Shown here piece by piece: positions 15,090 through 44,600 of a stretch of 64,000 bases of DNA (position 1 is its first letter; each line of letters begins with the position of its first letter). Origin of the DNA: Macrostomum lignano (lineage: Eukaryota); contig NIVC01000020.1 in assembly GCA_002269645.1 (NCBI GenBank), forward strand, positions 310,001 through 374,000. Reading direction: 5' to 3'. The notes beneath the pieces are model-generated. The model was not told where the DNA came from and made no database searches. It saw only the letters and a list, made by a program, of their open reading frames with translations. The position numbers were made by a program, and so were the translations under genes.

Positions 15090-15130
15090 GGCTGGGCTGG
15101 GCTGCTCGCTGCCTGCCCCACCCGCTCGCA

Positions 15131-21838: not shown

Positions 21839-22484
21839 TAAAACAGTTTTTTTTGCTTTTGAATTTGTGTTCATAAAAAATCAACTAATCAAGTCCAATT
21901 GTAAAGGCTTAGTTTCAACAGAATTAATGACTTGAAAACTATTTTTATTGAAACCGGTTCAAATAGGCAAATAGTGAATCTGTGTTCAGCTTACAATACC
22001 ATTCCAAAGCCTAAATTTCCCAATCTTGTGCTCCAAGCACTAGAATCCTCCAAGCTCCAAGCACTGTAGCGCCTGCGCCAGACTGTGAACATGCTATAAG
22101 GAACTATGAATATTTTCTAAAAATAGCTTTAGCTGCTGGCTCTCCCATGGAAAACCCGTCTGCAGTGTACAGCTTTTTAGGCTATTCCAAGGCAATGCCG
22201 TGGAATATACTGGGCACTGCCATGGGGTTTCCACACCGTCCAACTTCTAAATTTGTTTCAAAACCTATCTGCTCTTTCAGGCTGAACGAGAACTGAGCAG
22301 TCTACTGCTTCGTGCATTTGAGGAAGAGACTGGCATCTCTTTGCTCGTATCCTTTTGCAAGCGATTTGCCAGGAGCCATATTATCAGGTATGCAGGAAAA
22401 AAGGTGAAAAATACGTATCGAAAAAATACTTTTGCTTTTAGTAGATATGAACATTGATTCTCATATTATTTTATGCTTCATCAG

Positions 22485-24543
22485 ATGCCTGTGGTAGAGA
22501 TTCTGACTCAGCCGGTTGAGCACCACCGTCCCCGCTACGAGTCGGAGATCTCAACTAACAAGATTGGCGGCCTGCTGCTTGGCCGCGGCTCAACCGGAAA
22601 GGACAACAGAGCCTTCATCAAGCTGAAGATCAGTGGAATCGACCCAGCAGTGCACTGCAGGCTGCAGTTGTTTGTGTGCGTGGCCAGTCAGAATGGAGAG
22701 CTGCATCCGTACTACCTGCACGGAGACGGCTGCACAGATGGCTGCTTCTTCTGGGTGAAGCAAGTCGACTATCGGACCCCGAGCGAAATTGAAATACAGT
22801 AATGCACAAATTAATTGTTAGACAAGAGTATCTTAGAAGCTCGGGTGTATTGATCACGTCAGTTTTTTCAGGTTTTTTTCACAGATTCAACGAGAACATC
22901 GCAGACAAGATCGAGAAGTTAAAATCTTCAAGCGCAGCAGTTACTGTACCAGTGGGAGAGGCCACTAGAATTTAAAGGTACCGCAGATTCACAGCAGAAC
23001 AGAACGAAACGTTCATGATAGAGATGCTCGTTGTATTGCTTCCAGCTGCTCCCTGAGGTTTCAGGAGAATCTGTCCTGTCATAGTTTTTAGGACACTTCA
23101 TGGCTATGCTTTGCACGTTTACAATTTTACGGCTGTGCCCTGCGCTTATTCTATAACTGCTGCAAGGCTATTGCGCAAGTATAGCAAAAAGATGACTGAC
23201 GCACTGGAACCGTCCGATCTTTCAGGTTCGAAAGGCTGGCTGTTATCCGTTGCAAGACGTCTTCTGATGCCATTCAGGAGGCACTGAAAAAGCGCGAGGA
23301 ACAGGTTCAGGGCTGTCTTCTCCCCAACGGTGAGTTCTTACGCTCGTAATAATTGGATAATAACTTCGTCCGGTACTTTACCTTGAATTCTCGAACGTGA
23401 ATTGCTCATCCAGGTCTGAACCAGCCGGCTCAGAAGTACAACGGCAGAAATTTGGGCTCGATTCGTCTGGTTTTCCAGCTCAGCTTCTCTGACAATGGCT
23501 ACTGCCACTACCTGCAGCCAATATTCAGTGATGTGATCGCCGATATCAGTACGTACGTTTTCATCTCTAAAATTTCTTCAGTTTCTTTTCACACTCTTTA
23601 GTGATGTAGTGACACTCTTTAGTGACACTCTTTAGTGATGCAGTTGGATCATTTTCATTGGCTAGTTTTGGGCAGAAAGTCCAAACAAATAGTACGAATT
23701 ATTTTGTTCTTTTGAGCCTCCGTTTCTCATTCTCTTGCTTGAGTTTCTGCTTCATCGAGCCCTACCGAGAGCCTTCTGGACAGTTTCAAGAAAATAATGA
23801 ATTAGCCGTCACTACTGTAGTACTGTACTACTCATAGCTTCTATCAAGATTTGACGTCAGTAACTCATCTTTAAATTTCCAGAAGAAGTCAGGGTCATTT
23901 ACCCGGAGTCACTGAACCCTCAGGAAATTGCGCCAAATGGAGGCGAAATCGCCATCTATTGCACAAATTGTAATGGCGCAGCTTTTGTTATTAGAGATAC
24001 GAATTTGTTGATTGAATCGTGCTTTCTAAAGACGAGCCAAACTTTATAAATTGTTTCAGCACAAATGCCTATTAAAGAGGAAATTCGAGTGGTATTCGAG
24101 CTCAGTGTTGAGAGCAGTGAGACAACTGTGCGCGTTTCTGGCTGTGTCAAAAAAGTGATGAAGGTAAAACCTGCCTGCACTTTATACTGACAGACAATAG
24201 AGGCTTTTGATGCGCCAGGTAACTTGACAAAAATCTGCGTACCTTGCAGCACCTCATCATCGTCACTGTGCCAGACGTTCAGATGTTCGTGAAGACCGAG
24301 CGGACGAAGGCCAAAGTGCTCGTCGAACAGAACTTGCCCAAAACCGAGGACTCAACAAATTCGGCGCTTACTATCGCGTTCCTTCCTGGAGCACAGGCTG
24401 TAAGCAACTCGCAGTTTCGAAATTTTGACTTTTTGATCCAAATGAGCTCCAATGACGGAAAATAAATCTTCTGCTTCAATTAACAGGCCAGGACAGCTCG
24501 GAAGCGACCCGCTACTGCCTCGCTTGTGCAGGAAAAGACTTGA
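22485..24543 (+). CDS. Rel-homology-domain protein type 1 (RHD-N + IPT + basic NLS), 7 exons (22485-22798, 23226-23329, 23414-23548, 23883-23969, 24060-24163, 24250-24399, 24487-24543), about 316 aa
   Basis: Exons join in frame (951 nt). EILTQPVEHHRPRYESE, HPYYLHGDGCTDG, FERLAVIRC, NLGSIRLVFQL...LQPIFSDVIAD, GGEIAIYC, LIIVTVP and terminal ARKRP align in order with recalled RelA/p50 motifs (EIIEQPKQRGMRFRYKCE, HPHELVGKDCRDG, FQNLGIQC, DLNAVRLCFQ...PVLSHPIFD, GGDEIFLLC, AIVFRTP, KRKR). Confidence 0.85.
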
Positions 24544-25093
24544 CCTTCATGCCCCTGGCCGCGAATTGAATGCGAGCGCGAATCACTCGAAGTTCACGTC
24601 GGTGGCAGTCTGCGTTTTTTCAGCAGACAGCAATTTTCGAGTCAGGAGACTCAGACTTTCGAATTACATTCCAAAGGATCTTCTTTGTGCTAATGGAATT
24701 TATTTCCTGAGATGACTTAAAGAAACACAACAACACTTACTCATAAAAATCTTATAGATATGGATCTTAAATCTAAAAGAAATTGAGTAGAGAAGAGCAG
24801 AAATCTTTCTTTTATTTAGGCTCAATGAAATTTACTTTTTTAAATTAATATATAGTTATAAAAAAGGAATATTTTTAATTTTTTGTCTATTTTTTTTATA
24901 ACAACAGCAGGCAAAAGACACATTTGTTCGTCTCTGTATCCATAGTTTAAATGTAGCCTTTATCCATAGTGTCCCATCACACTGCATAGAGACATCCTAG
25001 AACAATTTAACGAGGATAGACACAGACTATTGCCAGAACATGGTAATGTGATCAAATGCGTTCTGTACCTGTGTAAATGTTTCAGCAACTCAA

Positions 25094-27186
25094 ATGCCCG
25101 AAGCGACTCCCAAGCTGTCTCTGTCCATCGCTCATCAGCCGACGAAAATCCATCGATTTCGCTACCTGAAGGAGGTCAGCGATGGCCGCATGGGCAGTGT
25201 TCTGCGCAGCCGCGCTCCTGGAGGCAAGACTCCAGTTGCAGTGACTGCGACTGTCCAATCTGTGAGCCCCGACTGCAAGCTGAAGCTGGTCGGCTGCACC
25301 GTATTCGAGGACCTGATGACGCACCCGTTCTACCTGACTGGGGACGACTGTCGGAACGGCGTGTTCGAGAAGGAGCTGAGCAGCAAATCCGGGCTATCCG
25401 AGCAGGAAGTGAAGTGAGTCTCAGTCTTTATCGCAGTCTAGCTTATCTGAGGAGTGTCCACTTTTTCCTTCTCGGAAGAAGTCGAGCATGGGTCAGTTTT
25501 GGAAGTGTGGAGAGGTAAGACTTTTTGCGAATTCCGTTCTCCTGTTGCGGGCTCTGTAATTCTGGGCTTATGCTGGCCCACACAGCATAAAAAGTGAGCT
25601 AAAAGTGCAAGTAAGACCATAAAGACATTAGGAAACAAAGTATTAGAAAGAGCTGAAGAATCTCCTGTTGCACCTACTACCTGATCGATGCATTCTGCTT
25701 CTACTCAGGCTGGAGAAGGTCGGCATCGTGTGCACTCCGAAAAAGCAGAGGAAGTCGAAAGGCAAGCCGAGCGGAGCCTCTGAGAATGGAGTTCCAGCAC
25801 ATATCGGCATGCAGAATGCAACCGCACAAGAAGATAACTTTTACATGGAAAGAATTCAAAAGTACAACTTTTTAAAAAGTAAGTCATGATTTGATAGACC
25901 TTCAAAACGCTGAATTTGTCTTTTCAAGAAGGCAAGCTTTCATTCATCCGCAGAGCCACCAAGGCCGAATCCATTCCAAGGCAAAGACGTCAACAAACTC
26001 AGACTGGCCTTCCAAGTGTTTTATCAGCTGCCGGGCTCAAGCGACTGGCTCGCTGCGGACTGCAGACCTGTGTACACCGAAGTCATTGGAGATGCCAGTG
26101 AGTGCTCTTTCCCTTTAACTTTGCAAGAGTGATTTGCAATCAGGTAGATGACCTGAGGGACTGCTTGACTTAGAACAAGAGCTTTTTCATTCCAGAGATC
26201 TTCTCCAAGATGGAAATCGAGTACATCATTCCGGACTCGGTGTCGCGTCCCGACCAGGACGTGTGGCTTTACACGAAGGGCGACCTGCCAGGTATGCAGC
26301 TTTGGACTACCGAATGATGCTTTTTAAATGCCGGAATGCAAATAAACCAGATCACAATTGCAGTTCAGAACGTTTCCGAATTAACTGTACGGCTGGAGCA
26401 TGAATCAGAGCCGCTGACTATCGAGCTGCAACCGAATGAGTTGAAGAAGGTAAAGTCTCAGAGTGCATGTGTAAACTGATGCAGAAATGCGCTGCATAGG
26501 ACTGAGAATTGTCGAAGTGTATAGCGTTTGTTAGAACCGATAGCTCGTACACAGTTGAATAATGCAATCTCAGTCAGAGCTGAGTTACCTATTCATGTTT
26601 ACTGTAAAAGAGGGGCTAAAGAGATGCACGCGCTGTACGATTGCAGCCCCTCAAATCACTGTTTGCAACCCAAATTAGCTTGTTTATCATCCCGATAACT
26701 TTTTGTCCCGGTTATGTTTTGTCCCGGAAAATCAGTAGTATTAAATGACTTGAGAAAAACCTGGGTCATTTTGCCAGTTCGTGCATTCATGTCTCTAAAG
26801 CGTGTTCCTAATTCCTTTACAGCACCTGGTAGTGTTCAACTTCGAGCAGCTGACCTTGACAAACGCTGTTTCCAGCTCATTTTCTGTGACTCTCGTGGAC
26901 AAGAAGAATGATGACTCGAGCGAGCCGGTGAAACTGGAGCTGATCAATTTGTCAAATGATCCGTCAGGTAAACCGTTTGGTTACTAAATTTAATGCTGTA
27001 AATCCTTTAACAATACTTTTATTATCCATGATGATTTCAGTCTCTGACCCTAAAAGTAAAAAAGCCAGGCGTGAAGAGAAGCCAACTACTCCACAAGATC
27101 CCATGGATGAGCTTCTTGGCACTTTTCTGGATGGTAATGGAGACCTACAGGAGCTGCCGGAGCTTTACGTGGAGCCTCGTGCGTAG
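25094..27186 (+). CDS. Rel-homology-domain protein type 2, copy 1; 7 exons (25094-25413, 25709-25878, 25954-26097, 26196-26291, 26364-26449, 26823-26967, 27041-27186), about 368 aa
   Basis: In frame (1107 nt). QPTKIHRFRYLKE, HPFYLTGDDCRNGVFEKEL (RelA HPHELVGKDCRDGFYEAEL), LEKVGIVCTPKK, NPFQGKDVNKLRLAFQV...PVYTEVIGD, HLVVFNF...SSEPVKLEL, NLS KSKKARR, acidic tail DPMDELLGTFLD. Confidence 0.88.
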
Positions 27187-29749
27187 AACTGACCCTATCA
27201 TAAAGACCAAGAGTCGAGTGGAAAAAATGACCAAGAATTTCCAACTATTATTATTGTCCTACTCATCATCAACACTCTAATTTGAATTTTCCGTTTGCAA
27301 CAGCAAGTGTCCGCTTTGAACTTTTTGAGTCAGAAATTGTAACATAAATTCAGTCGCCTCGAGTTGGTTCTCCCTTCCATTTGTTGAGTTTCATTATTTT
27401 ATCATCAGTATTTGCCGTATCGCAATATATCAAAAATATTACAAACAGCTAATCACATTTTGCAAAAGCGAAGTCATAATAATGCCACCTTCTTCGTAAC
27501 GCGTTCAAGGACACTGATATGCCAGAATTCTTCATTTAAGTTCTTAATATTGAGAGCTTACTAACTTGAAATTTTGTTGTTTGCAACAGTTTATTTATTT
27601 CATTTTTTAAGTTGAAATATAGTCTCATAATTCCCAGAGCAAATTGCTTCGCTTTTGAATGCACATCCCGAGAGTAGACGCACAAGTAATGTACGCTAAT
27701 ATTCTAGCTCCATGTTCTGACGGCTTTTCCATGGTTTTTCCACTTCATTTTGTTCTCTCAATGTCTGTGTACGTATAGTTTTGCGTGCATTACACTGTAC
27801 TCTCATTGTACAGCCTACTCTGTCGTTTGCGGAGTTCCTTATTTTCCTTTTAAAAGCGGCCAGACTGCTGCTGCATTATTGCAGTTTTGTCGCTGTTTTC
27901 GTCAAAAAAGTACTGTTTCGAAAGTAAGTGTTTTTTTAACGATTTTGTCTTTAAATTTAAATTGAAACCTAATTTCTTTCAGCTTGATCATTCATTCTAT
28001 GTTCTATTAGCGTTGGGCAAAGCTTTTAAACGTAAAAAAGTTCAAGCAGTGCTAATATAATACATATGATTCGGCGTATGAGAAATGTTCTCATTCCCAA
28101 ATTTTCACGACTCACAATTACCCCCAACTTCACAATCACAAAACTTTGCATCCAAAAGTTGCATATATTCGCTTTTTCATAAATTGCTTCTTCCAGAACT
28201 TTTGAATTGCTTGGTTGCGTGGTCAAGGTTGTGTCTGTGAGCAAATTAAATTGCCTGCTTTTCAAGCTTTTAATGAAACTTTTATGTCTCTTCATGGAGT
28301 TAGTGGGCTTTGAAGTGTTTTGTTGGCCTTTCTGCCAAGCGTTGGCCGGAGACAGCGTTCATCTACATTTTTTAATTTTTTAGCTCAATATAGCTAGCCT
28401 CCAAATTAGTTTTCAGAAACTGGCACACGCTTACTGTATCACCGTTAAGTTAAAGGGCAAAAATAAAACTGCTAGCTCACAGTTGGTGCGCATAAAGTGC
28501 AACGGTTTTCAGGACACTCGCTATATCCATAAATCGTTTGCTGATTTTCAGAGGGAAGCGAAACACCTCAAAATGTATATTCTTCATATTTCAGTCCCAA
28601 ATACTATCCCAAATTGAGGTTGTGAAAGCGTGTGCACAATGTGAAGATTGAGACTCTTGTATAGATTAGGGATTGGGAAAAACTTGGGAGAGAGTTAAAT
28701 AAAGGGTTGTGAAATATGAGGATTGTGGAGTTTAAAGTTAATGAAATATGGCGACTGCCAAGTTTAGTGCATACATATTTCAAGCACGCACCGAATATGC
28801 CGCAGTGATTGATGCGTCCTGTGTGTATTCTGTGATGGATAAGACGCTTCACTTGTATGAGTAGCCACCCCAGAACTCTCAGGTTATCTTGGGCTACAGG
28901 CTTCATCAAAGAACTGTCCTTTTTGATTTGCAGTGAACTGAAGGAGTCTCTTGGGTAGCAATGCTGGCAACTCTCGAATAAATTAACTTCTAAGGGTCGA
29001 TTTTGCACTGATGCACGGATGAGAATACATTTTCTGAAGAATATTTTGACTGCTCATTAAGCAAGCGATTAAGCAACAAATAAAGCATTATCAAGTTACG
29101 AGTAGATTATCAAGTAAGCCGTATTGGTGGAACATCCGTATGGAATTAAAAAGCTGCTGTGGAGCAAAGCGTACATGTACTGGGTCACAGCTCGTGCGGC
29201 ATTTCTGTGTCCAAGATGACTGCCAATCTACAGTGGGGTTACAAGGCTGGATTAAAATAAGGCATTAACAACAAGGCGTATCCCGGCTCATAATGGTTTA
29301 AGTTGTAAGAAGTCGTTTAGAGGGACGTAATAATCGAACGTGTGCGCATAGTGCAGCCATTTTTCTGAGCAAAAAATGACTTTTGAGGTTCCGCATGCGC
29401 TATTGTGACTTATAGTTTCGAAAACTTTATTGACTGAAACTGCTGACCTGTTCATTCACAAATTATGGTTTGCGAACAAAGCTTTGAGCGGCAATAAAAA
29501 CCTGTTGATTCCGGAGAGTTCTTCTGATCACTCTACCTCTCTCCTCACTCTTCTTGGTCCAGCTCCCCGGTTCTCCTACTCGTAGCTTTGTTTTCTCTTC
29601 TAAAATAGAATGTTTAGCAAACAATGAAAACTAAGAGGTTTAAATTCTGAGATTGTAATCGCTTTGAGTATCTAATAAGTTGCTCATTCTGAACCAACTG
29701 ATTGCACTGCTCTTGCAGAACTGTATAGTTTCTGATTTTTAATCTGCTA

Positions 29750-29965
29750 TGGGTTGTGGCATAGTGGTCAGTTCGAGCGTCAGACTCACGACCGAGCTGT
29801 CGAGGGTTTGATTGAGACCCACTCAAAACAGTTTGTGTTTTTGAGCAAGACCACTTAACTCTGCATTGCTTCGGTGCACCCAGCAATAAAATGTTTGCTA
29901 GAATTAGCCGGGGTTATTAAGGATGTCTGTGGCGACCCTCCTGACAGCTGCACAACAACTGCTTC
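29750..29965 (+). mobile_element. tRNA-derived SINE (A/B boxes plus CORE-like segment), copy in unit A
   Basis: A box TGGCATAGTGG (29757-29767), degenerate B box GGGTTTGATT (29804-29813), then GTGTTTTTGAGCAAGACCACTTAACTC...GCACCCAGC, which resembles SINE core domains. Confidence 0.65.
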
Positions 29966-30001
29966 CCCACGCCTTGCCATATTTTTATCCAGCAAACGCA
30001 A

Positions 30002-32128
30002 ATGTCTGAACCGGCTCCCAAGCTGTCTCTGTCCATCGCTGATCAGCATCAGCCGACGAAAATCCATCGATTTCGCTACCTGAAGGAGGTCAGCGATGGC
30101 CGCATGGGCAGTGTTCTGCGCAGCCGCGCTCCTGGAGGCAAGACTCCAGTTGCAGTGACTGCGAATGTCCAATCTGTGAGCGCCGGCTGCAAGCTGAAGC
30201 TGGTCGGCTGCACCGTATTCGAGGACCTGGCGACGCACCCGTTCTACCTGGCTGGGGACGACTGTCGGAACGGCGTGTTCGAGAAGGAGCTGAGCAGCGA
30301 ATCCGGGCCATCCGAGCAGGAAGTGAGGTGAGTCTCAGTCCCTATCCCAGTCTAGCCTATCTGTCCGCTTTTTCCGCTGTTTCCTTCTCGGAAGTAGCCG
30401 AGCATGGGTCAGTTTTAGAAGTGAGGAGAGGTAAGAGTTTTGTGAATTCCGTTCTCTTATTGCAAACGCTGTAGTTCTGAGTTTATGCTGGACCACAATA
30501 TACAAAAAGTGAGCTAAAAATGCAAGTAGGAGCATACAGGCATTAGAAAAACAAAGTATTGGAAAGAGCTTGAGATATTGTGAGATCTCCTGTTGCACCT
30601 ACTACCTGATCGATGCATTCTGCTTCTACTCAGGCTGGAGATGGTCGGCATCGTGTGCACTCCAAAAAAGCAGAGGAGGTCGAAAGGCAAGCCGAGCGGA
30701 GCCTCTGAGAATGGAGTTCCAGCACATATCGGCATGCAGAATGGAACCGCACAAGAAGATAACTTTTACATGGAAAGAATTCAAGAGTACAACTTTTTAA
30801 AAAGTAAGTCGTGATTTGATAGACCTTCAAATCGCTGAATTTGTCTTTTCAAGAAGGCAAGCTTTCATTCATCCGCAGAGGAACCAAAACAGAATCCATT
30901 CCAAGGCAAAGACATCAACAAACTCAGACTGGCCTTCCAAGTGTTTTATCAGCTGCCGGGCTCAAGCGACTGGCTCGCTGCGGACTGCAGTCCTGTGTAC
31001 ACCGAAGTCATTGGAGATGCCAGTGAGCGAACTTTCCCTTTAACTTTGCAAGAGTGATTTGCAATCAGGTGGATGACCTGAGAGACTGCTTGACTTAGAA
31101 CAAGAGCTTTTTCATTCCAGAGATCTTCTCTAAGATGGAAATCGAGTACATCATTCCGGACTCGGTGTCGCGTCCCGACCAGGACGTGTGGCTTTACACG
31201 AAGGACGATCTGCCAGGTATGCAGCTTTTATTTGGATTACCAAGTTGTGCTTTTTTAAATGCCGGAATGCAAATAAATCAGATCACAATTGCAGTTCAGA
31301 CCGTTTCCGAATTAACTGTGCGGCTGGAGCATGAATCAGAGCCGCTGACTATCGAGCTGCAGCCGAAGGAGTTGAAGAAGGTAAAGTCTCAGAGTTCATG
31401 TGTAAACTGATGAAGCAATACACGGCATAGGATGTGAAGGGAAGAAGTCAGTAGTAGCGTTTGTTGAAACCAATAGGTCGTACACATTTGAATGATGCAA
31501 TCTCAGTCAGAGTTGTCAGTTGAGTGAGCAGCAAAGTTACCTATTGCATGTGTACTGTAAAAGAGGGGTTGAAGTGACACACGGGCTGTAAGATTGCAGA
31601 CTGTCAAATCACTGCTTGCAATCCAACTTACAGCTCGTCGAAATCCCGATAACCTTTTATCCCGGTCATGTTTTTCAGAAGCTGCTGAAGATTAGTAGTA
31701 TAAAATTACTGAGAAAACCTTCGTCAGTCGTGCGTTCCTGTCTCTAAAGCGTGTTTCTAATACCTTTGCAGCACCTGGTAGTGTTCAACTTCGAGCAGCC
31801 AATCTTGACAAACACTGTTTCCGGCTCATTTTCTGTGACTCTCGTGGACAAGAAGAATGATGACTCGAGCGAGCCGGTGAAACTCGAGCTGATCAATTTG
31901 TCAAATTATCCGTCAGGTAACCCGTTTGATTGCTAATTTTAATGCTGCAAGGCCTTTAACTGTATATTTTATTATCCATGATGATTTTCAGGCTTCGACC
32001 CTGCAAGAAAGAAGGCTAGACGTGATGAGAAGCCAACTGTTTCTCAAGATCCCATGGATGAGCTTCTTGGCATTTTTCTGGATGGTAATGGAGGTGACCT
32101 GCAGGAGCTGCCGGAGCTTTACGTTTAG
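30002..32128 (+). CDS. Rel-homology-domain protein type 2, copy 2 (7 exons; GAG>TAG change trims the last 4 residues)
   Basis: All seven exons checked with intact GT-AG and frame. Starts MSEPAPKLSLSIADQHQPTKIHRFRYLKE, ends QELPELYV*. Confidence 0.85.
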
Positions 32129-34825: not shown

Positions 34826-34829
34826 CTGA

Positions 34830-35500: not shown

Positions 35501-35503
35501 CAA

Positions 35504-36797
35504 TGCAAGACGTCTTCTGATGCCATTCAGGAGGCACTGAAAAAGCGCGAGGAACAGGTTCAGGGCTGTCTTCTCCCCAACGGTGAGTTCTTACGCTCGT
35601 AATAATTGGATAATAACTTCGTCCGGTACTTTACCTTGAATTCTCGAACGTGAATTGCTCATCCAGGTCTGAACCAGCCGGCTCAGAAGTACAACGGCAG
35701 AAATTTGGGCTCGATTCGTCTGGTTTTCCAGCTCAGCTTCTCTGACAATGGCTACTGCCACTACCTGCAGCCAATATTCAGTGATGTGATCGCCGATATC
35801 AGTACGTACGTTTTCATCTCTAAAATTTCTTCAGTTTCTTTTCACACTCTTTAGTGATGTAGTGACACTCTTTAGTGACACTCTTTAGTGATGCAGTTGG
35901 ATCATTTTCATTGGCTAGTTTTGGGCAGAAAGTCCAAACAAATAGTACGAATTATTTTGTTCTTTTGAGCCTCCGTTTCTCATTCTCTTGCTTGAGTTTC
36001 TGCTTCATCGAGCCCTACCGAGAGCCTTCTGGACAGTTTCAAGAAAATAATGAATTAGCCGTCACTACTGTAGTACTGTACTACTCATAGCTTCTATCAA
36101 GATTTGACGTCAGTAACTCATCTTTAAATTTCCAGAAGAAGTCAGGGTCATTTACCCGGAGTCACTGAACCCTCAGGAAATTGCGCCAAATGGAGGCGAA
36201 ATCGCCATCTATTGCACAAATTGTAATGGCGCAGCTTTTGTTATTAGAGATATAAATTTGTTGATTGAATCGTGCTTTCTAAAGACGAGCCAAACATTTA
36301 TAAATTATTTCAGCACAAATGCCTATTAAAGAGGAAATTCGAGTGGTATTCGAGCTCAGTGTTGAGAGCAGTGAGACAACTGTGCGCGTTTCTGGCTGTG
36401 TCAAAAAAGTGATGAAGGTAAAACCTGCCTGCACTTTATACTGACAGACAATAGAGGCTTTTGATGCGCCAGGTAACTTGACAAAAATCTGCGTACCTTG
36501 CAGCACCTCATCATCGTCACTGTGCCAGACGTTCAGATGTACGTGAATACCGAGCGGACGAAGGCCAAAGTGCTCGTCGAACAGAACTTGCCCAAAACCG
36601 AGGACTCAACAAATTCGGCGCTTACTATCGCGTTCCTTCCTGGAGCACAGGTTGTAAGCAACTCGCAGTTTCGAAATTTTGACTTTTTGATCCAAATGAG
36701 CTCCAATGACGGAAAATAAATCTTCTGCTTCAATTAACAGGCCAGGACGGCTCGGAAGCGACCCGCTACTGCCTCGCTTGTGCAGGAAAAGACTTGA
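35504..36797 (+). pseudogene. 5'-truncated duplicate of the type-1 Rel gene (starts within exon 2; exons 3-7 intact)
   Basis: Near-identical to 23251-24543 but lacks exon 1 (DNA-recognition loop) and the exon 2 acceptor. Confidence 0.85.
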
Positions 36798-37352
36798 CCT
36801 TCATGCCCCTGGCCGCGAATTGAATGCGAGCGCGAATCACTCGAAGTTCACGTCGGTGGCAGTCTGCGTTTTTTCAGCAGACAGCAATTTTCGAGTCAGG
36901 AGACTCAGACTTTCGAATTACATTCCAAAGGATCTTCTTTGTGCTAATGGAATTTATTTCCTGAGATGACTTAAAGAAACACAACCACACTTACTCATAA
37001 AAATCTTATAGATATAGATCTTAAATCTAAAAGGAATTGAGTAGAGAAGAGCAGAAATTTTTCTTTTATTTAGGCTCAATGAAATTTACTTTTTTAAATT
37101 AATATATAGTTATAAAAAAGGATTATTTTTCATTATTTGTCTATTTTTTATTTTTATAACAACAGCAGGCAAAAGACACATTTGTTCGTCTCTGAATCCA
37201 TAGTTTAAATGTAGCCTTTATCCATAGTGTCCTATCATACTGCATAGAGACATCCTAGAACAATTTACGAGGATAGACACAGATTATTGCCAGAACATGG
37301 TAATGTGATCAAATGCGTTCTGTACCTGTGTAAATGTGTTTCAGCAACTCAA

Positions 37353-39294
37353 ATGTCTGAAGTGGCTCCCAAGCTGTCTCTGTCCATCGCTCATCAGCCG
37401 ACGAAAATCCATCGATTTCGCTACCTGAAGGAGGTCAGTGATGGCCGCATGGGCAGTGTTCTGCGCAGCCGCGCTCCTGGAGGCAAGACTCCAGTTGCAG
37501 TGACTGCGACTGTCCAATCTGTGAGCGCCGGCTACAAGCTGAAGCTGGTCGGCTGCACCATATTCGAGGACCTGATGACGCACCCGTTCTACCTGACTGG
37601 GGACGACTGTCGGAACGGCGTGTTCGAGAAGGAGCTGAGCAGCGAATCCGGGCCATCCGAGCAGGAAGTGAAGTGAGTCTCAGTCTTTATCGCAGTCTAG
37701 TTTATCTGAAAAGTGTCCACTTTTTCCTTCTCGAAAGAAGTCGAGCATGGGTCAGTTTTAGAAGTGTGGAGAGGCAAGACTTTTTGCGAATTCCGTTCTC
37801 CTGTTGCGGGCTCTGGGCTTATGCTGGCCCACACAGCATAAAAAGTGAGCTAAATGTGCAAGTATGAACATAAAGACATTAGGAAACAAAGTATTAGAAA
37901 GAGCTGAAGGATCTCCTGTTGCACCTACTACCTGATTGATGCATTCTGCTTCTACTCAGGCTGGAGAAGGTCGGCATCGTGTGCACTCCGAAAAAGCAGA
38001 GGAAGTCGAAAGGCAAGCCGAGCGGAGCCTCTGAGAATGGAGTTCCAGCACATATCGGCATGCAGAATGGAACCACACAAGAAGATAACTTTTACATGGA
38101 AAGAATTCAAAAGTACAACTTTTTTGGAAGTAAGTCGTGATTTGATAGACCTTCAAAACGCTGAATTTGTCTTTTCAAGAAGGCAAGTTCTCATTCATCC
38201 GCAGAGAAACCAAAACAGAATCCATTCCAAGGCAAAGACATCAACAAACTCAGACTGGCTTTCCAAGTGTTTTATCAGCTGCCGGGCTCAAGCGACTGGC
38301 TCGCTGCGGACTGCAGTCCTGTGTATACCGAAGTCATTGGAGATGCCAGTGAGTGCTCTTTCCCTTTAACTTTGCAAGAGTGATTTGCAATCAGGTAGAG
38401 GACCTGAGAGACTGCTTGACTTAGAACAAGAGCTTTTTCATTCCAGAGATCTTCTCCAAGATGGAAATCGAGTACATCATTCCGGACTCGGTGTCGCGTC
38501 CCGACCAGGACGTGTGGCTTTACACGAAGGACGATCTGCCAGGTATGCAGCTTTTATTTGGAGTTTTTTGAATGCCTGAATGCAAATAAATCGAGCCTTA
38601 ATTGCAGCTCAGAGCGTTGTCGAATTAACTGTGCGGCTGGAGCAAAAATCAGAGCCGTTTATGATTATCGAGCTGCAACCGAAGGAGTTGAAGAAGGTAA
38701 AGTCTCAGAGTTCATGTGTAAACTGATGCAGAAATACACTGCATAATTACGCAATCTCAGTCAGGGCTGAGTGATCAGCATAGTTACCTATTCAAAAGCA
38801 CTGTAATAGAAGGTGGAAGGTATGTTTTTCGGAGGCAACGGAAGCTTATTTAATGTCGATCAGAAAAAGTTTCGTCACTTTGTCAGTTTGTGCGTTCATT
38901 CCTCTAAATGTTCCTAATGCCTTTACAGCACCTGGTAGTGTTCAACTTCGAGCAGCTGATCTTGACAAACGCTGTTTCCGGCTCATTTTCTGTGACTCTC
39001 GTGGACAAGAAGAATGATGACTCGAGCGAGCCGGTGAAACTGGAGCTGATTAATTTGTCAAATGATCCGTCAGGTAAACCGTTTGGTTACTAAATTTAAT
39101 GCTGTAAATCCTTTAACAATACTTTTTATTATCCATGATGATTTTCAGGCTCTGACCCTGCAAATAAGAAGGCCAGACGTGATGAGAAGCCAACTGTTCC
39201 ACAAGATCCTATGGAGGAGCTCCTTGGCACTTTTCTGGATCATAATGTTGACATGCAGGATCTGTCGGAGGTTTACGTGGAGCCTTGTGCTTAG
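37353..39294 (+). CDS. Rel-homology-domain protein type 2, copy 3 (7 exons)
   Basis: Starts MSEVAPKLSLSIAHQPTKIHRFRYLKE, ends SEVYVEPCA*. Splice sites and frame intact. Exon 5 variant AQSVVEL...QKSEPFMII. Confidence 0.85.
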
Positions 39295-40702
39295 AACTGA
39301 CCAAGGGTTTGGAATTGAGTGGAAAAGACTTTCATCTTTCATTTTTTCACACTCTTGCTCTAATTTAACTCTAATTTAATTTTTCTGCTTTCACGGTTGG
39401 CCGTTCGTTCTGAATTTTCTGAGCCTCAAGTTGGCTTTGCAATGCGACGTTGCGTTCTACTTGTTGAAGATTTTGGTTCGCTGGTACAAGTACACATGCT
39501 GAGCTCGTAATCTTTCATGAGAAACCCTTCCCTTTGTTTAATTAATTCTTTTATCATAAGCGAGAGCTAATCAATATTGGAAATGTACAGCCATAATTTC
39601 AACTGCTACGGAACGTGAACAAGCAACTGATAAGCCAGCATTCTGAAATTTTTAGCTCTTCATTATTCTAACTTGAAATTTAAAGCGTTCAATTTCGTGG
39701 TTTGCTACGGCTTATTTCATCTTTTAATTTCAAATTATATTGAGTCACGATTCCCTGAAAACTGTTTCGCTTTTGAATGAAAGCACACCCGAGAGTACAC
39801 ACACAAGAAATGTGCGCTAATAGCTCCATGTTCTGACGGCTTTTCCATGGTTTTTCCACTTCATTTTGTTCTCTTTATGTGTGTGCATTTAGTTTTGCGT
39901 GCATACACTGTACTCTCATTGTACAGCTTGCTCTGGCAAGTGCTTGCGGAGTTCCTTTTTTCCTTACTCGTAAAAAGCGGCCAGACTGCAACTTCTGCAT
40001 TGTGCATTGCAGTTTGGTCCTCCTGTCGTCTTAAAATTACTGCTTCAAGAGTAAGTGTTTTTTTCGATTGTTGTCTTTTAATTAAAATCGAAACCCAATT
40101 TCTTCCAGCTTAATCATTCATTCTATGCATTATTAGTGTTGGGTAAAACGTTTAAACGTACAAATGAAATGTTCTCATTCACTACGAGCGTAGTTTTCAC
40201 GACCCACAATTGCTCTCAACTTTACAATCCCAAAACTATGCATCCCTATTTTGCATATGTTCGCTTTTTCATAAATTGCTTCTTCCAGAAATTTCGAATA
40301 GCTTAGTTGCGTGTGAAAGCTTTGTCTATTGAGCAAATTAAATGCCTGTTATTTTCTTTCAGGCTTTCAAATTTTTTGACTCTTCATAGAGGTTTTGGGC
40401 CGGCTTTACAGTGTTTTGTTGGCTTTTCTGCCAAGCGTTGCCGGACGCATCGACAATTTTCCATTTTTGAGCTCAATAGCTATAAACTTCTAATTAGTTT
40501 TCCGAGACCAAATTTTCGGAGTGAAACTGGGACATATTTACTGTACAACAGTCAAGTTGGCAGAACTGCTCGCTCACAGTAAGCCCATGAAGCTTTTTGG
40601 CCGACCCGCTACATCCATAATTTGTTTTCTCATCTTCAATGGGAAGCGAAGCACCCCTAAATTTTTCGTTCTTCATATTTCAGTCCCAAATAATATCCCA
40701 AA

Positions 40703-41512
40703 AGCTTGGTTGTGAAAGTGTGTGCGCAATGTGAATGTTGAGACTCTTGTAGTTTAGGGATCGTAAAAAAGCTTGGTTGTGAAAGTGTGTGCGCAATGTG
40801 AATGTTGAGACTCTTGTAGTTTAGGGATCGTAAAAAAGCTTGGTTGTGAAAGTGTGTGCGCAATGTGAATGTTGAGACTCTTGTAGTTCAGGGATCGTAA
40901 AAAAGCTTGGTTGTGAAAGTGTGTGCGCAATGTGAATGTTGAGACTCTTGTAGTTTAGGGATCGTAAAAAAGCTTGGTTGTGAAAGTGTGTGCGCAATGT
41001 GAATGTTGAGACTCTTGTAGTTTAGGGATCGTAAAAAAGCTTGGTTGTGAAAGTGTGTGCGCAATGTGAATGTTGAGACTCTTGTAGTTCAGGGATTGTA
41101 AAAAAGCTTGGTTGTGAAAGTGTGTGCGCAATGTGAATGTTGAGACTCTTGTAGTTTAGGGATCGTAAAAAAGCTTGGTTGTGAAAGTGTGTGCGCAATG
41201 TGAATGTTGAGACTCTTGTAGTTTAGGGATCGTAAAAAAGCTTGGTTGTGAAAGTGTGTGCGCAATGTGAATGTTGAGACTCTTGTAGTTTAGGGATCGT
41301 AAAAAAGCTTGGTTGTGAAAGTGTGTGCGCAATGTGAATGTTGAGACTCTTGTAGTTTAGGGATCGTAAAAAAGCTTGGTTGTGAAAGTGTGTGCGCAAT
41401 GTGAATGTTGAGACTCTTGTAGTTTAGGGATCGTAAAAAAGCTTGGTTGTGAAAGTGTGTGCGCAATGTGAATGTTGAGACTCTTGTAGTTTAGGGATTG
41501 TAAAAAAGCTTA
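40703..41512. repeat. 67-bp minisatellite, about 12 copies
   Basis: Unit AAGCTTGGTTGTGAAAGTGTGTGCGCAATGTGAATGTTGAGACTCTTGTAGTTTAGGGATCGTAAAA. Confidence 0.95.
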
Positions 41513-42384
41513 GGAGAAAGTTAAAATGAGGGGTTGTGAAATATGAGGATTGTAAAGTTTGAAGTTTATGAAATATGGGGAATGTCTGTCAAATTTAGTG
41601 CATAAATATACAGAATGCATCCCATTTATAGTGCTTCAAGCACGCACCGAATATGCCGCAGTGATTGATGCGTCCTGTGTGTATTCTGTGATGGATAAGA
41701 CGCTTCACTTGTATGAGTAGCTTCCCCAGAAATCTCAGGTTATTTGGGGCTACAGGCTTCATCAAAGAACTGTCCTTTTTTATTCACAGTGAACTGAAGG
41801 AGTCTCTTGGGTAGCAATGCTGGCAAATCTCGAATATTAACTTCTAAGGGTCGACTTTGCACTGATGCACGCATGAAAATACTTTCTTTGAAGAACATTT
41901 TGACATTATCATACCAGATTATCAAGTAAGCCGTATCGGTGGAAAATCCGTATGGAATTAAAAGCTGCCGTGGAGCAACGCGTACATGTACTGGTCACAG
42001 CTCTCGCGGCATTTCTGTGTCCAAGATGACAGCCAATCTGCAGTGGTTTACAAGGCTTGATTAAAATAAGGCATTAACTACAATGCGTATCTCGGCTCAT
42101 AATGGGTTAAGTTGTAAGAAGTCGATTACAGGGCCTAATCAAGCGTGCGCATGGTGCAGCCGTTTTTCTGAGCAAAAAATGACTTTTGAGGCTCATCATG
42201 CGTTGCTATGGCTCAGGCTCGAAATTTTATTGACTGAAACTGCAGACCTGTTCATTCACAAATATAGTTTGTGAACAAAGCTTTGAGCCATAATGAAAAC
42301 CTGTCAATTGCGGGGAGTTCTGCTACACATTCTTGAACCAAACGATTAGTACAATCGTTTGCTCGGGCAAATTTTGATCTGCTA

Positions 42385-42600
42385 TGGGTTGTACTTGTAG
42401 CTTAGTGGTCAGTTCGAGCGTCGGACTCACGATCAAACTGTCGAGGGTTCGATTCTCAACCCACTCGGAACAATTTGTGTTTTTGAGCAAGACCACTCAA
42501 CTCTACATTGTGCACCCAGCTATAAAATGGTTACCAGAATTAGCCGGGGTTATTGAGGATGTGTGTGGCGACCCCCAGGGAGCCTTCAGATGCTCTGCAC
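42385..42600 (+). mobile_element. tRNA-derived SINE, copy in unit B
   Basis: A box TAGCTTAGTGG (42398-42408), B box GGTTCGATTC (42446-42455), same CORE-like body as 29750-29965. Confidence 0.7.
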
Positions 42601-42641
42601 AACAGCTGCTTCTCCACGCCTTGCCACATTTTATCCAGCTA

Positions 42642-44600
42642 ATGGAAATGGCTGAACCGGCTCCCAAGCTGTCTCTGTCCATCGCTGATCAGCATCAGCC
42701 GACGAAAATCCATCGATTTCGCTACCTGAAGGAGGTCAGTGATGGCCGCATGGGCAGTGTTCTGCAAAGCCGCACTGCTGGAGGCAATAGACAAGTTACA
42801 GTGACTGCGAATGTCCAATCTGTGAGCGCCGGCTGCAAGCTGAAGCTGGTCGGCTGCACCGTATTCGAGGACCTGATGACGCACCCGTTCTACCTGACTG
42901 GGGACGACTGTCGGAGCGGCGTGTTCGAGAAGGAGCTGAGAAGCGAATCCGAGCAGGAAGTGAGGTGAGTCTCAGTCTTTATCGCAGTCTACGCTCGTAG
43001 CTTATCTGAGGAATGTCCACTTTTTCCTTCTCGGAAGAAGTCGAGCATGGGTCAGTTTTGGAAGTGTGGAGAGGCGTTTTGCGAATTCCGTTATCCTTTT
43101 GCGGGCTCTGGGCTTATGCTGGCCCACACAGCATAAAAAGTGAGCTAAAAGTGCAAGTATGACCATAAAGACATTAGGAAACAAAGTATTAGAAAGAGCT
43201 GAAAGATCTCCTGTTGCACCTACTACCTGATCGATGCATTCTGCTTCTACTCAGGCTGGAGAAGGTCGGCATCGTGTGCACTCCGAAAAAGCCGAGGAAG
43301 TCGAAAGGCAAGCCGAGCGGAGCCTCTGAGAATGGAGTTCCAGCACATATCGGCATGCAGAATGCAACCGCACAAGAAGATAACTTTTACGGGGAAAGAA
43401 TTCAAAAGTACAACTTTTTTGGAAGTAAGTCGTGATTTGATAGACCTTAAAAACGCTGAATTCGTCTTTTCAAGAAGGCAAGTTTTCATTCATCCGCAGA
43501 GCCACCAAGGTCGAATCCATTCCAAGGCAAAGACATCAACAAACTCAGACTGGCCTTCCAAGTGTTTTATCAGCTGCCGGGCTCAAGCGATTGGCTTGCT
43601 GCGGACTGCAGACCTGTGTACACCGAAGTCATTGGAGATGCCAGTGAGTGCTCTTTCCCTTTAACTTTGCGTTAGGTATTTGCAATCAGGTAGATGACCT
43701 GAGAGACTGCTTGACTTAGAACAAGAGCTTTTTCATTCCAGAGATCTTCTCCAAGATGGAAATCGAGTTTATCATTCCGGACTCGGTGTGGCGTCCCGAC
43801 CAGGACGTGTGGCTTTACACGAAGGACGATCTGCCAGGTATGCAGCTTTTATTTGGAGTACCAAATTATGCTTTTTTGAATGCCTGAATGCAAATAAATC
43901 GAGCCTTAATTGCAGCTCAGAGCGTTGTCGAATTAACTGTGCGGCTGGAGCAGAAATCAGAGCCGTTTATGATTATCGAGCTGCAGCCGAAGGAGTTGAA
44001 GAAGGTAAAGTCTCAGAGTTCATGTGTAAACTGATGCAGAAATACACTGCATAATAACCCAATCTCAGGCAGGGCTGAGTGATCAGCATAGTTACCTATT
44101 CAAAAGCACTGTAATAGAAGGTGGAAGGTATGTTTTTCGGAGGCAACGGAAGCTTATTTAATGTCGATCAGAAAAAGTTTGGTCATTTTGTCAGTTTGTG
44201 CGTTCATGCCTCTAAATGTTCCTAATACCTTTGCAGCACCTGGTAGTGTTCAACTTCGAGCAGCCGATCTTGACAAACGCTGTTTCCGGCTCATTTTCTG
44301 TGACTCTCGTTGATAAGAGGAATGATGACTCGAGCGAGCCGGTGAAACTGGAGCTGATCAATTTGTCCAATGATCCGTCAGGTGAACCGTTTGGTTACTA
44401 AATTTAATGGCGCAAATCCTTTCGCATTTTTTTTATTTTCCATTGTGATTTCAGGCTCTGACCCTGTAAAAAAGAAGGCCAGGTGTGATGAGAAGCCAGC
44501 TGTTCAACAAGATTCCTTGGATGAGCTCGTTGGCACTTTTGTGGATGATAATGGGTACCTGGAGGATCTGTCGCAGCTTTACGTGGAGCCTCGTGCTTAG
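42642..44600 (+). CDS. Rel-homology-domain protein type 2, copy 4 (7 exons)
   Basis: Starts MEMAEPAPKLSLSIADQHQPTKIHRFRYLKE, ends SQLYVEPRA*. Splice sites and frame intact. Confidence 0.85.

What the first reader, a model, noticed from the sequence alone, without database searches (positions are those of the whole stretch)
22485..44600. Expanded tandem cluster of highly divergent NF-kB/Rel-like transcription factor genes in two subfamilies
Seen: five complete 7-exon genes (one type 1, four type 2) and one truncated type-1 copy, all on the + strand. Each encodes RHD-N + IPT + basic NLS, and no ankyrin, death or other domain follows. The ORF track fragments them, so automated annotation would likely miss them. 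Established: most invertebrates have only a few Rel/NFAT genes, and canonical NF-kB is commonly described as missing in studied flatworms (recalled, not checked here). Inference: a lineage-specific, diversifying Rel-like family, possibly an immune or stress regulatory module.
Basis: partly seen in the sequence, partly recalled or inferred. Interest (0 to 1): 0.9.

Follow-up and report, generated by a model that had tools for sequence, protein, structure and literature searches.

The report
Tandem Rel-like transcription factor genes, flatworm
This stretch of the Macrostomum lignano (free-living flatworm) genome really does carry five intact and one truncated copy of very divergent Rel/NF-kB-type transcription factor genes, part of a larger flatworm-specific expansion that sits in the databases only as 'hypothetical' or 'RHD domain-containing' proteins and has not been studied.

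Summary
Window 22485-44600 holds six + strand genes. T1A, T2A, T2B, T2C and T2D are complete, each with 7 exons and all GT-AG introns. T1B lacks exon 1 and part of exon 2. The window is Macrostomum lignano contig NIVC01000020.1.

T2 proteins pass Pfam RHD_DNA_bind (41.6-45.7 bits, cutoff 27). T1 is borderline on its own but clearly homologous to T2. A family profile hits RelB, c-Rel and p65 structures (E 1e-18 to 1e-15) across both RHD subdomains. p50 is weaker (about 1e-10) and NFAT is not matched (0.3). The C-terminal domain alone matches Rel dimerisation domains only by profile-profile comparison (94%). No ankyrin or death domain follows.

- Annotation did not miss the genes. Four transcript-based GenBank models exist, but T2B is unannotated and T2C/T2D are merged into a chimera.
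- The "cluster" is a three-gene unit (T1-T2-T2, with a neighbouring CIMIP2-like gene) duplicated once in tandem.
- The genome holds many more subfamilies, which form one clade (95/100 bootstrap).
- Diversifying selection is not shown (dN/dS 0.5-1.0).
- Immune function is untested.

Verdict: a real, uncharacterised, lineage-specific Rel-like family, and a new member of a known kind.

The parts
22485..24543 (+). T1A: complete type-1 Rel-like gene, 7 exons (22485-22798, 23226-23329, 23414-23548, 23883-23969, 24060-24163, 24250-24399, 24487-24543), 316 aa. Architecture is RHD-N + IPT + RKRP basic cluster, with no acidic tail.
   Evidence: Hand-built model with all GT-AG introns. Identical to PAA93791.1 BOX15_Mlig011617g1 / UniProt A0A267H663 'RHD domain-containing protein'. 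Exon 1 scores 27.3 bits on PF00554. 36-41% identical to PF00554-positive paralogs.
25094..27186 (+). T2A: complete type-2 Rel-like gene, 7 exons (25094-25413, 25709-25878, 25954-26097, 26196-26291, 26364-26449, 26823-26967, 27041-27186), 368 aa. Architecture is RHD-N + IPT + KKARR + acidic/hydrophobic tail.
   Evidence: 100% identical to BOX15_Mlig011617g2. PF00554 41.6 bits, covering positions 1-168 of 169.
30002..32128 (+). T2B: type-2 gene, 7 exons, 367 aa. A TAG lies 3 codons before the usual stop at 32140. Not annotated in GenBank. Intron 4 (31217-31294, 78 nt) is in frame and free of stops.
   Evidence: no gene is called at L001 14915-17053.
34829..35497 (.). 44-bp x 15 minisatellite at the junction between duplication unit 1 and unit 2. 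T1B homology starts 7 nt downstream. A shorter copy of the same repeat (47232-47451) ends unit 2.
35504..36797 (+). T1B: 5'-truncated type-1 copy lacking exon 1 and about the first 25 nt of exon 2, so it lacks the DNA-recognition loop. Exons 3-7 are intact.
   Evidence: Annotated as the 206-aa partial protein PAA93793.1 BOX15_Mlig013462g1.
37353..39294 (+). T2C: complete type-2 gene, 7 exons, 369 aa.
   Evidence: Exons 1-3 appear in the chimeric GenBank model PAA93794.1.
42648..44600 (+). T2D: complete type-2 gene, 7 exons, 368 aa.
   Evidence: PF00554 45.7 bits. Exons 4-7 appear in PAA93794.1.
23251..47451 (+). Two tandem copies of a unit of about 12.3 kb: [T1 - T2 - T2 - CIMIP2B-like gene on the minus strand - 44-bp minisatellite]. 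Unit 1 runs to 35497 and unit 2 runs 35504-47451.
   Evidence: Self-alignments 23251-26498 vs 35504-38745 (96.5%) and 31720-35051 vs 44187-47451 (89.9%). The homeologous contig NIVC01001367.1 has only one unit.
34225..34677 (-). Exon of the neighbouring CIMIP2B-like (ciliary microtubule inner protein) gene that is duplicated together with the Rel-like genes. Second copy at 46630-47079.
   Evidence: PF10629 23.8 bits. The same neighbour is present in L002.

Best explanation
The locus is a tandemly duplicated block of Rel-homology-domain transcription factor genes in Macrostomum lignano. These genes belong to a fast-evolving Rel/Dorsal-like family so far seen only in this species.

Shown here:
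- The gene structures, their transcript-based annotation and RHD homology across both subdomains.
- Conservation of the recognition-loop residues R-x-R-Y-x-x-E, with the redox cysteine replaced by K (T2) or S (T1).
- Absence of ANK, GRR and death domains.
- Monophyly of the M. lignano family in a rough tree.
- Origin of the six-gene array by one tandem duplication of a T1-T2-T2 unit, with its junction at a minisatellite.

Inferred:
- The proteins dimerise through the IPT domain and bind kappaB-like DNA half-sites.
- Nuclear entry runs through the basic cluster.
- The family falls into two architectural classes. T1 and the 'type 3' paralogs stop right after the NLS and have no activation region. 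T2 and its relatives carry a conserved acidic-hydrophobic C-terminal motif (DELLGTFLD in T2, DDDLLGFLYD in another subfamily) that probably acts as a transactivation motif.
- T1 and T2 neighbours share a transcriptional-unit name, so they are probably co-transcribed and separated by SL trans-splicing. This makes them plausible heterodimer partners, functionally analogous to p50/p65.

The upstream signal cannot be a canonical TLR, because M. lignano has none. The biological role (immunity, stress or development) is unknown.

The confidence of 0.8 applies to the identity and origin of the genes. The heterodimer and co-transcription steps taken alone are nearer 0.3-0.5.
For: Gene models and identity to GenBank proteins:
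-.
- The annotation is RNA-seq based (PMC5730564).

RHD homology:
- Pfam PF00554 scores 41.6 and 45.7 bits for T2.
- The family profile against PDB sequences gives RelB 1.2e-18, c-Rel 2.8e-16, p65 2.4e-15, p50 about 3e-10 and NFATc1 0.3. The alignment spans profile positions 7-291 of 320 and chain residues 15-284.
- The AF2 model is of low confidence, yet its top 30 Foldseek PDB hits are all Rel/NF-kB chains, with E down to 8e-10.
- The IPT-only profile against 128 canonical Rel dimerisation domains gives hhalign probability 94.1%, E=1.3e-7 and a score of 44. Sixty column-shuffled controls scored 10.8 +/- 1.9, maximum 18.4.

Lineage-specific family:
-.
- Of the 133 best non-Mlig relatives, only 3 carry ANK motifs and none is NFAT-type.

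Other points:
- NLS and tail classes.
- Tandem duplication and the single-unit homeolog.
- AG acceptors lie 0-10 nt upstream of each ATG.
- Dissimilar neighbouring genes share a TU prefix: Mlig011617 g1/g2, Mlig013462 g1/g2, Mlig033322 g1-g3.
- Signs of constraint: intact 7-exon ORFs in five copies, in-frame-only coding indels, and exon divergence of 5-7% against intron divergence of 9-16% for most pairs.
Against: - Pfam RHD_dimer is not detected in any copy.
- The IPT-only profile finds nothing in PDB by profile-sequence search.
- Full-length T1A gets no Pfam hit.
- Both AF2 models are poor (pLDDT 47). The T1B model's Foldseek hits are not significant (best E=5.5e-3) and are mixed with other Ig-like folds.
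- dN/dS is high: 0.6-1.0 overall, and above 1 in RHD-N on small counts. Some copies may therefore be drifting.
- Co-transcription is inferred from a naming convention, not from reads.
- DNA binding, dimerisation, nuclear import and transactivation are all untested.
- The NJ tree is simple, and its alignment regions were cut with a family HMM, so long-branch attraction could inflate the support for monophyly.
Confidence: 0.8

Rival explanations
1. Most copies are redundant duplicates decaying toward pseudogenes in a recently polyploid, repeat-rich genome. Under this view the array has no function beyond that of one or two founder genes.
For: - dN/dS is 0.6-1.0 among T2 copies and 0.5-0.8 against the homeolog.
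- T1B has lost its DNA-recognition half.
- T2B has a premature stop.
- The homeologous T1 in L002 carries frameshifting indels and is annotated as only 140 aa.
Against: - Five copies keep seven exons, all splice sites and open frames despite 59-82 coding differences per pair.
- Every coding indel is a multiple of 3.
- Exons are about half as diverged as introns for most pairs.
- Transcript-based models exist for four of the genes.
- T2B's stop removes only 3 residues.
Confidence: 0.15
2. The second unit (35504-47451) is an assembly artefact: a homeolog or haplotype wrongly joined in tandem at the minisatellite. The true locus would then have only T1-T2-T2.
For: - The homeologous contig has a single unit.
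- The junction lies exactly at a 44-bp minisatellite.
- Identity between the two units (87-96.5%) is in the same range as identity between homeologs (about 94%).
- The genome is a hidden polyploid with a redundant assembly (PMC5730564; PMC10468722 abstract).
Against: - The array lies inside a 1.55-Mb long-read contig.
- Identity between the units is mosaic: 96.5% over T1/T2 5' parts, about 90% elsewhere, and T2C-T2D introns only 5% diverged. This looks like gene conversion between true neighbours.
- Unit 2 has its own 67-bp x 12 minisatellite insertion.
- A GenBank transcript model joins T2C and T2D exons.
Confidence: 0.1
3. The genes are NFAT/NFAT5-type or class I NF-kB (p105/Relish)-type factors rather than Rel/Dorsal-type.
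For: - The T2 loop 'HRFRYLKEVSDGRMGSV' loosely recalls, from memory, the NFAT5 'RYL.EGSRGSV' region.
- The Cys-to-Ser change in the loop (RFRYESE) also occurs in a few ANK-bearing relatives.
Against: - NFATc1 scores E=0.3 against 1e-18 to 1e-15 for RelB, c-Rel and p65. p50 is about 8 orders of magnitude weaker than Rel.
- No NFAT-type loop is found among the best 150 relatives, and only 3 of 133 have ANK motifs.
- None of the proteins has ANK, GRR or death domains.
Confidence: 0.04

Closest known systems
Class II Rel proteins (vertebrate RelB, c-Rel, RelA/p65; insect Dorsal/Dif; Anopheles Gambif1)
   Same: - Two-domain Rel homology region followed directly by a basic NLS, with no ANK repeats.
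- These are the best profile matches (RelB 70 bits, c-Rel 62, p65 59; Dorsal and RelB are the top non-Mlig hits).
- The conserved motifs R-F-R-Y-x-x-E, HP..L.G.DC..G, (L/V)(G/A)(I/V).C, and RL.FQ are all present.
- T2 has a short acidic/hydrophobic C-terminus where Rel proteins carry transactivation domains.
   Different: - Only about 17-30% identity.
- The redox-sensitive loop cysteine is replaced (K in T2, S in T1).
- The dimerisation domain is too divergent for Pfam RHD_dimer.
- The proteins are much shorter (316-369 aa, against about 550-970).
- T1 has no C-terminal region at all.
- T2 has an insert of about 40 residues in RHD-N.
- The family is expanded to many subfamilies in tandem clusters.
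RHD-only NF-kB of cnidarians (e.g. Nematostella Nv-NF-kB; reviewed in PMC13042239)
   Same: A naturally truncated protein consisting of little more than the RHD, without an ANK inhibitory domain.
   Different: - Cnidarian proteins are NF-kB (p50-like) orthologs, some with a glycine-rich region. They are usually single-copy.
- The M. lignano proteins score far better against Rel than against p50, lack a GRR and are multi-copy.
Seven divergent RHD transcription factors of the planarian Schmidtea mediterranea (PMC13563047)
   Same: Flatworm RHD genes on long branches with low similarity to immune NF-kB. The setting is the same: no clear NF-kB or TLR pathway.
   Different: - A relationship to the M. 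lignano family could not be tested here, because no Schmidtea sequences were reachable with the remaining tools.
- No Schmidtea-like close relative appeared among the 17 strong hits.
- A tandem T1-T2-T2 arrangement is not described for Schmidtea.

Membership tests
Rel homology domain (Rel/NF-kB/NFAT) superfamily | N-terminal RHD DNA-binding domain (Pfam PF00554) above the gathering score | tested here: met
   - T2A scores 41.6 bits and T2D 45.7 bits against a cutoff of 27, covering positions 1-168 of 169.
- T1A is only borderline: exon 1 alone scores 27.3 bits and the full-length protein gives no hit.
- T1A is nevertheless 36-41% identical to PF00554-positive paralogs and matches T2A at E=4e-21.
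Rel homology domain (Rel/NF-kB/NFAT) superfamily | DNA-recognition loop R-x-R-Y-x-x-E. The base-contacting roles of Arg, Arg, Tyr and Glu in p65/p50 are recalled from the crystallographic literature. | tested here: met
   The loop reads HRFRYLKE in T2, HRPRYESE in T1 and YRFRYESE in type 3. It aligns to RFRYKCE of c-Rel and RelB. The Cys is replaced by K or S.
Rel homology domain (Rel/NF-kB/NFAT) superfamily | C-terminal Ig-like (IPT) dimerisation domain: Pfam PF16179 hit | tested here: not met
   No RHD_dimer hit at E<=10 for T1A, T2A or T2D. The IPT-only profile finds nothing in PDB sequences.
Rel homology domain (Rel/NF-kB/NFAT) superfamily | C-terminal Ig-like (IPT) dimerisation domain: remote homology or fold | tested here: met
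   - hhalign of the IPT-only family profile against 128 canonical Rel dimerisation domains gives probability 94.1%, E=1.3e-7, 96 aligned columns and a score of 44. Shuffled controls reach at most 18.4.
- The full-length profile alignment runs through the dimerisation domain of RelB, c-Rel and p65.
- Foldseek alignments of the T2A model span 330-350 columns of Rel chains.
- The T1B model gives only weak enrichment for RHD-C folds.
Rel homology domain (Rel/NF-kB/NFAT) superfamily | Dimerisation and sequence-specific binding to kappaB-type DNA | not testable with these tools
   Needs recombinant protein assays.
Class I NF-kB (p105/p100/Relish) | C-terminal ankyrin-repeat inhibitory domain, with or without a glycine-rich region or death domain | tested here: not met
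   - The proteins end 10-45 residues after the NLS, with no ANK or death-domain Pfam hit.
- The transcript-based models stop at the same codons.
- p50 structures score about 1e-10, against 1e-18 for RelB.
Class II Rel/Dorsal | RHD closest to Rel/Dorsal, no ANK, and a C-terminal transactivation region | tested here: inconclusive
   - Closest similarity to Rel/Dorsal is met.
- T2 has a conserved acidic-hydrophobic tail shared with other subfamilies, but its activity is untested.
- T1 has no tail.
- In the NJ tree the family forms its own long-branched clade rather than nesting within sampled Rel groups.
NFAT / NFAT5 | NFAT-type RHD (R-A-H-Y-E-T-E-G loop) with best similarity to NFAT structures | tested here: not met
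   NFATc1 scores E=0.3 over 27 residues only. There is no NFAT-type loop among the 150 best relatives.

The most novel reading that the evidence does not exclude
Macrostomum, and perhaps flatworms more widely, replaced the lost canonical TLR-to-NF-kB axis with a private, rapidly evolving Rel-like system. This system would be built from two architectural classes: activation-domain-less 'T1/type 3' subunits and tail-bearing 'T2-clade' subunits. They are encoded as neighbours, co-transcribed in operon-like units resolved by SL trans-splicing, and would act as combinatorial heterodimers. Elevated dN/dS in the DNA-binding domain would then reflect diversifying selection on target or pathogen interactions. 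N-terminally truncated copies such as T1B would act as natural dominant-negative dimer partners.
Probability: 0.15. Interest if true: 0.7.

Novelty: new member of a known kind. Interest (0 to 1): 0.45.

Why it matters
Flatworms are usually described as lacking TLRs and clear NF-kB. The transcription factors downstream of their conserved immune kinases (for example TBK1 in planarians, PMC13563047) are unknown.

This work gives M. lignano a documented, transcript-supported family of Rel-like genes, with exact gene models for one cluster. The family has about 7-11 subfamilies arranged in tandem clusters. M. lignano is transgenic-capable and amenable to RNAi, so these genes are concrete candidates to test.

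The work also corrects the public annotation. One gene is missing, one model is chimeric, and several family members carry wrong UniProt names.

It is not a new kind of molecule. Automatic pipelines had already flagged the proteins as RHD-containing.

Tried and rejected
2. Spliced window proteins could not be submitted to the representative search or to AlphaFold. I used the identical or near-identical database proteins instead, so T1A itself was never modelled.
3. The third homolog search, using the alignment, returned only M. lignano proteins already known and added nothing.
4. Both AF2 models have pLDDT of about 47, because only 10-12 closely related sequences were available. The T2A model still retrieves only Rel/NF-kB chains. 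The T1B model gives non-significant, mixed Ig-fold hits. I treat the structures as weak support only.
5. The IPT-only profile against PDB sequences gave no hit. Homology appeared only with profile-profile comparison.
7. I first read the '.gN' gene suffix as position within one transcript. The paper shows that the prefix marks clusters of transcriptional units at 95% identity or more. Co-transcription is therefore inferred only because dissimilar neighbouring genes share a prefix.
8. Literature searches found no paper on Macrostomum RHD genes. Peiris et al. 2014 was not held, and no supplements were held for the 2026 planarian paper.
9. NFAT-like and p105-like classifications were considered and rejected.

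Full report
**Source of the window**

The spliced type-2 protein is 100% identical to GenBank 'hypothetical protein BOX15_Mlig011617g2' of Macrostomum lignano. The encoding contig is NIVC01000020.1 (1.55 Mb) of assembly GCA_002269645.1. From the locus coordinates, window position 1 corresponds to about contig position 310001. The region is repeat-rich and full of minisatellites.

**Checking the observation**

Six-frame ORF lists show short, recurring + strand ORFs whose translations look like pieces of a Rel homology domain. I aligned the four type-2 copies at DNA level and read the frames. This gave unambiguous gene models with seven exons each, all GT-AG introns and identical intron phases.

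| Gene | CDS coordinates | Length | Note |
|---|---|---|---|
| T1A | 22485-24543 | 316 aa | complete |
| T2A | 25094-27186 | 368 aa | complete |
| T2B | 30002-32128 | 367 aa | TAG three codons before the usual stop |
| T2C | 37353-39294 | 369 aa | complete |
| T2D | 42648-44600 | 368 aa | complete |
| T1B | about 35504-36797 | partial | begins mid-exon 2, directly after a 44-bp x 15 minisatellite; exons 3-7 almost identical to T1A |

tblastn finds no other copies in the window. The models are independently validated. T2A and T1A are identical to GenBank proteins. That annotation was built from RNA-seq, trans-splicing and poly(A) data rather than ab initio (PMC5730564).

**Domain content: the N-terminal domain**

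- T2A and T2D pass Pfam RHD_DNA_bind over the full model, at 41.6 and 45.7 bits against a cutoff of 27.
- T1A is marginal. Exon 1 alone scores 27.3 bits, and the full-length protein gives no hit.
- T1A nevertheless aligns to T2A over about 300 residues (23% identity, E=4e-21). It is also 36-41% identical to further M. lignano paralogs that do carry PF00554.
- A profile of 12 family members searched against all PDB sequences hits RelB (1.2e-18), c-Rel (2.8e-16), p65 (2.4e-15), p50/p105 (about 3e-10) and Anopheles Gambif1 (3e-10). NFATc1 reaches only E=0.3. The alignments run through both RHD subdomains.
- The recognition loop R-x-R-Y-x-x-E is kept, with the loop cysteine replaced by K or S. The motifs HP..L.G.DC..G, (V/L)(G/A)(I/V).C and RL.FQ are also kept.

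**Domain content: the C-terminal domain**

The C-terminal domain is much weaker evidence.

- Pfam RHD_dimer is not detected.
- An IPT-only profile finds nothing in PDB.
- Profile-profile comparison against 128 canonical Rel dimerisation domains gives 94.1% probability and E=1.3e-7 over 96 columns. The score is 44, against at most 18.4 in 60 column-shuffled controls.
- AlphaFold models are poor (pLDDT 47) because only 10-12 related sequences could be supplied.
- The T2A model still retrieves exclusively Rel/NF-kB chains as its top 30 PDB matches, with E down to 8e-10.
- The T1B model gives only non-significant enrichment for RHD-C folds.

A basic cluster follows the IPT domain in every subfamily (KKARR, RKRP, KRARP, KRKRP), and nothing resembling ANK, GRR or death domains follows. 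The IPT domain rests on remote-homology evidence, and the NLS rests on inspection only.

**How the cluster arose**

Self-comparison shows 23251-26498 matching 35504-38745 at 96.5%, and 31720-35051 matching 44187-47451 at 89.9%. A second contig, NIVC01001367.1 (locus L002), is collinear with the window at about 94% from 20279 to 35497. It then jumps to 47229.

L002 carries one unit: T1, T2, T2, then a CIMIP2B-like gene on the minus strand. The window carries this unit twice, about 12.3 kb per copy. The junction is at the 44-bp minisatellite, and it cut off the 5' end of the second T1.

Identity between the units is mosaic. T2C and T2D share very similar introns (5% divergence) and 3' halves, which suggests gene conversion between neighbours. 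The 'expanded cluster' is thus a three-gene block duplicated once.

**Family context**

An exhaustive HMM search of 1.84 billion representative proteins found 346 relatives at E<=1e-3. Seventeen of them score at least 131 bits. After those comes a gap down to 88 bits.

All the strong hits I looked up are M. lignano proteins. The next tier is insect Dorsal and vertebrate RelB. Of the 133 best non-Mlig hits, only 3 have ANK motifs and none has an NFAT-type loop.

The M. lignano sequences fall into about 29 distinct proteins at 95% identity, 11 groups at 60% and 7 groups at 45%. These counts include redundancy from polyploidy and from two annotation versions. Other subfamilies also sit in tandem:

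- Two type-3 genes lie side by side in L003.
- PAA90847, PAA90849, PAA90850 and PAA90851 lie on one contig.

A simple NJ tree places ten subfamily representatives in one clade with 95/100 bootstrap support against 37 diverse Rel/Dorsal/NF-kB proteins. T1 groups with the 'type 3' genes and T2 with the remaining subfamilies. The caveats are long branches, a distance method, and regions cut with a family HMM.

**Two architectural classes**

T1 and the type-3 proteins end just after the NLS. T2 and its clade carry a short acidic-hydrophobic C-terminal motif, which recurs in subfamilies less than 45% identical:

- DELLGTFLD (T2)
- DDDLLGFLYD
- EEDFMAFL
- DLSDLLTSF

This is the basis for proposing an activation-less class and an activating class, functionally like p50 and p65.

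Every gene has an AG acceptor 0-10 nt upstream of its ATG. Neighbouring genes that are not similar to each other share a transcriptional-unit prefix:

- Mlig011617 g1/g2 correspond to T1A/T2A.
- Mlig013462 g1/g2 correspond to T1B and the T2C/D model.
- Mlig033322 g1-g3 are in L002.

The prefix is assigned per transcriptional-unit cluster. Co-transcription with SL trans-splicing is therefore likely, but it is inferred rather than read from data.

**Selection**

- Among T2 copies, dN/dS is 0.6-1.0. In RHD-N it is 1.2-2.2, but on only 3-6 synonymous differences.
- Against the homeolog, dN/dS is 0.52 for T1, 0.78 for T2A and 0.68 for T2B.
- Exons are less diverged than introns for most pairs (5-7% against 9-16%).
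- All coding indels are in frame.

Together this indicates weak constraint with fast protein evolution. 'Diversifying selection' is possible but not demonstrated.

**Annotation and literature**

The claim that annotation would miss the genes does not hold. However, T2B has no GenBank model. PAA93794.1 joins T2C exons 1-3 to T2D exons 4-7. Several family members carry misleading UniProt names: 'DnaJ_C domain-containing', 'Inositol-pentakisphosphate 2-kinase' and 'Arrestin_C domain-containing'.

No paper in the searchable library discusses Macrostomum RHD genes. The relevant context is:

- Platyhelminthes lack p50/p105 (PMC11432056).
- M. lignano lacks TLRs (PMC8609888).
- Schmidtea has seven highly divergent RHD factors on long branches, and knock-down of one of them was lethal (PMC13563047).

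Divergent flatworm RHD genes are therefore already on record in outline. This family and its organisation are not.

**Verdict**

The finding is real and correctly identified as Rel-like. It is a new, uncharacterised member, or set of members, of a known family. It is of moderate interest as a candidate output layer for flatworm immune or stress signalling. Function, DNA binding, dimer partners and mode of selection remain to be tested.

Noticed in passing
window 37353-44600 (GenBank PAA93794.1 = P0002): The deposited gene model BOX15_Mlig013462g2 is a chimera. Residues 1-220 equal T2C (exons 1-3) and the last 160 residues equal T2D (exons 4-7). This implies a 5.4-kb 'intron' that skips the rest of T2C. 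It is either a read-through or hybrid transcript, or a multi-mapping artefact.
   Followed up: yes
window 30002-32140: T2B is an intact 7-exon gene with no GenBank gene model. Its 78-nt intron 4 (31217-31294) is in frame and free of stops, so intron retention would add 26 residues inside the IPT domain.
   Followed up: partly
window 35435-35602: An ATG inside the last minisatellite units opens an ORF (MSAQVAKMNRAAEAKCQLKSLLQ...) that reads straight into the truncated T1B exon 2. UniProt A0A1I8GJG7 (P0005) uses it. T1B could therefore make a protein that lacks the DNA-recognition half of RHD-N while keeping IPT and the NLS.
   Followed up: partly
window 34225-34677 and 46630-47079, minus strand: A CIMIP2B/FAM166-like (ciliary microtubule inner protein, PF10629) gene is duplicated together with the Rel-like unit. 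The same neighbour is present at the homeologous locus L002.
   Followed up: partly
window 40700-41511: A 67-bp x 12 minisatellite (99% identical units) lies between T2C and T2D. It has no counterpart between T2A and T2B. Its minus strand gives a ladder of overlapping 58-aa ORFs that are not genes.
   Followed up: partly
window 2800-17400: There is a very dense run of minisatellite arrays, with periods from about 14 to 90 bp and identities of 85-99%. GC is 50-62% and strand composition skew is strong (GC skew -0.53 at 6-8 kb, +0.35 at 12-14 kb). These arrays produce many long spurious ORFs in all frames.
   Followed up: no
window 62-1000 (+): An RNase H domain fragment (PF00075, 31 bits), probably the tail of a retrotransposon pol gene that runs off the window start.
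   Followed up: partly
window 14319-15131 (-) and 15782-20804 (-): A CCCH zinc-finger exon (weak zf_CCCH_4 hit), followed by a 1049-aa multi-exon gene with no Pfam domain. The latter has a 1020-aa counterpart next to the homeologous cluster in L002, so it is the conserved upstream neighbour of the Rel-like unit.
   Followed up: partly
window 54919-55497 (+): An exon encoding a thioredoxin domain with a WCDAC active-site motif (PF00085, 63.7 bits). It looks like a TMX/PDI-type membrane thioredoxin gene.
   Followed up: no
Database records P0005, P0164-P0166, P0178: Several UniProt entries that cluster at 90% identity or more with this RHD family carry unrelated automatic names: 'DnaJ_C domain-containing', 'Inositol-pentakisphosphate 2-kinase' and 'Arrestin_C domain-containing'. 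These probably come from fused or mis-split models in the older assembly.
   Followed up: no
L002 2208-3168 (NIVC01001367.1): The homeologous T1 copy has exon indels that are not multiples of three (1 deleted and 13 inserted bases relative to T1A) and is annotated as only 140 aa. One homeolog of T1 may be decaying while both T2 homeologs stay open.
   Followed up: partly
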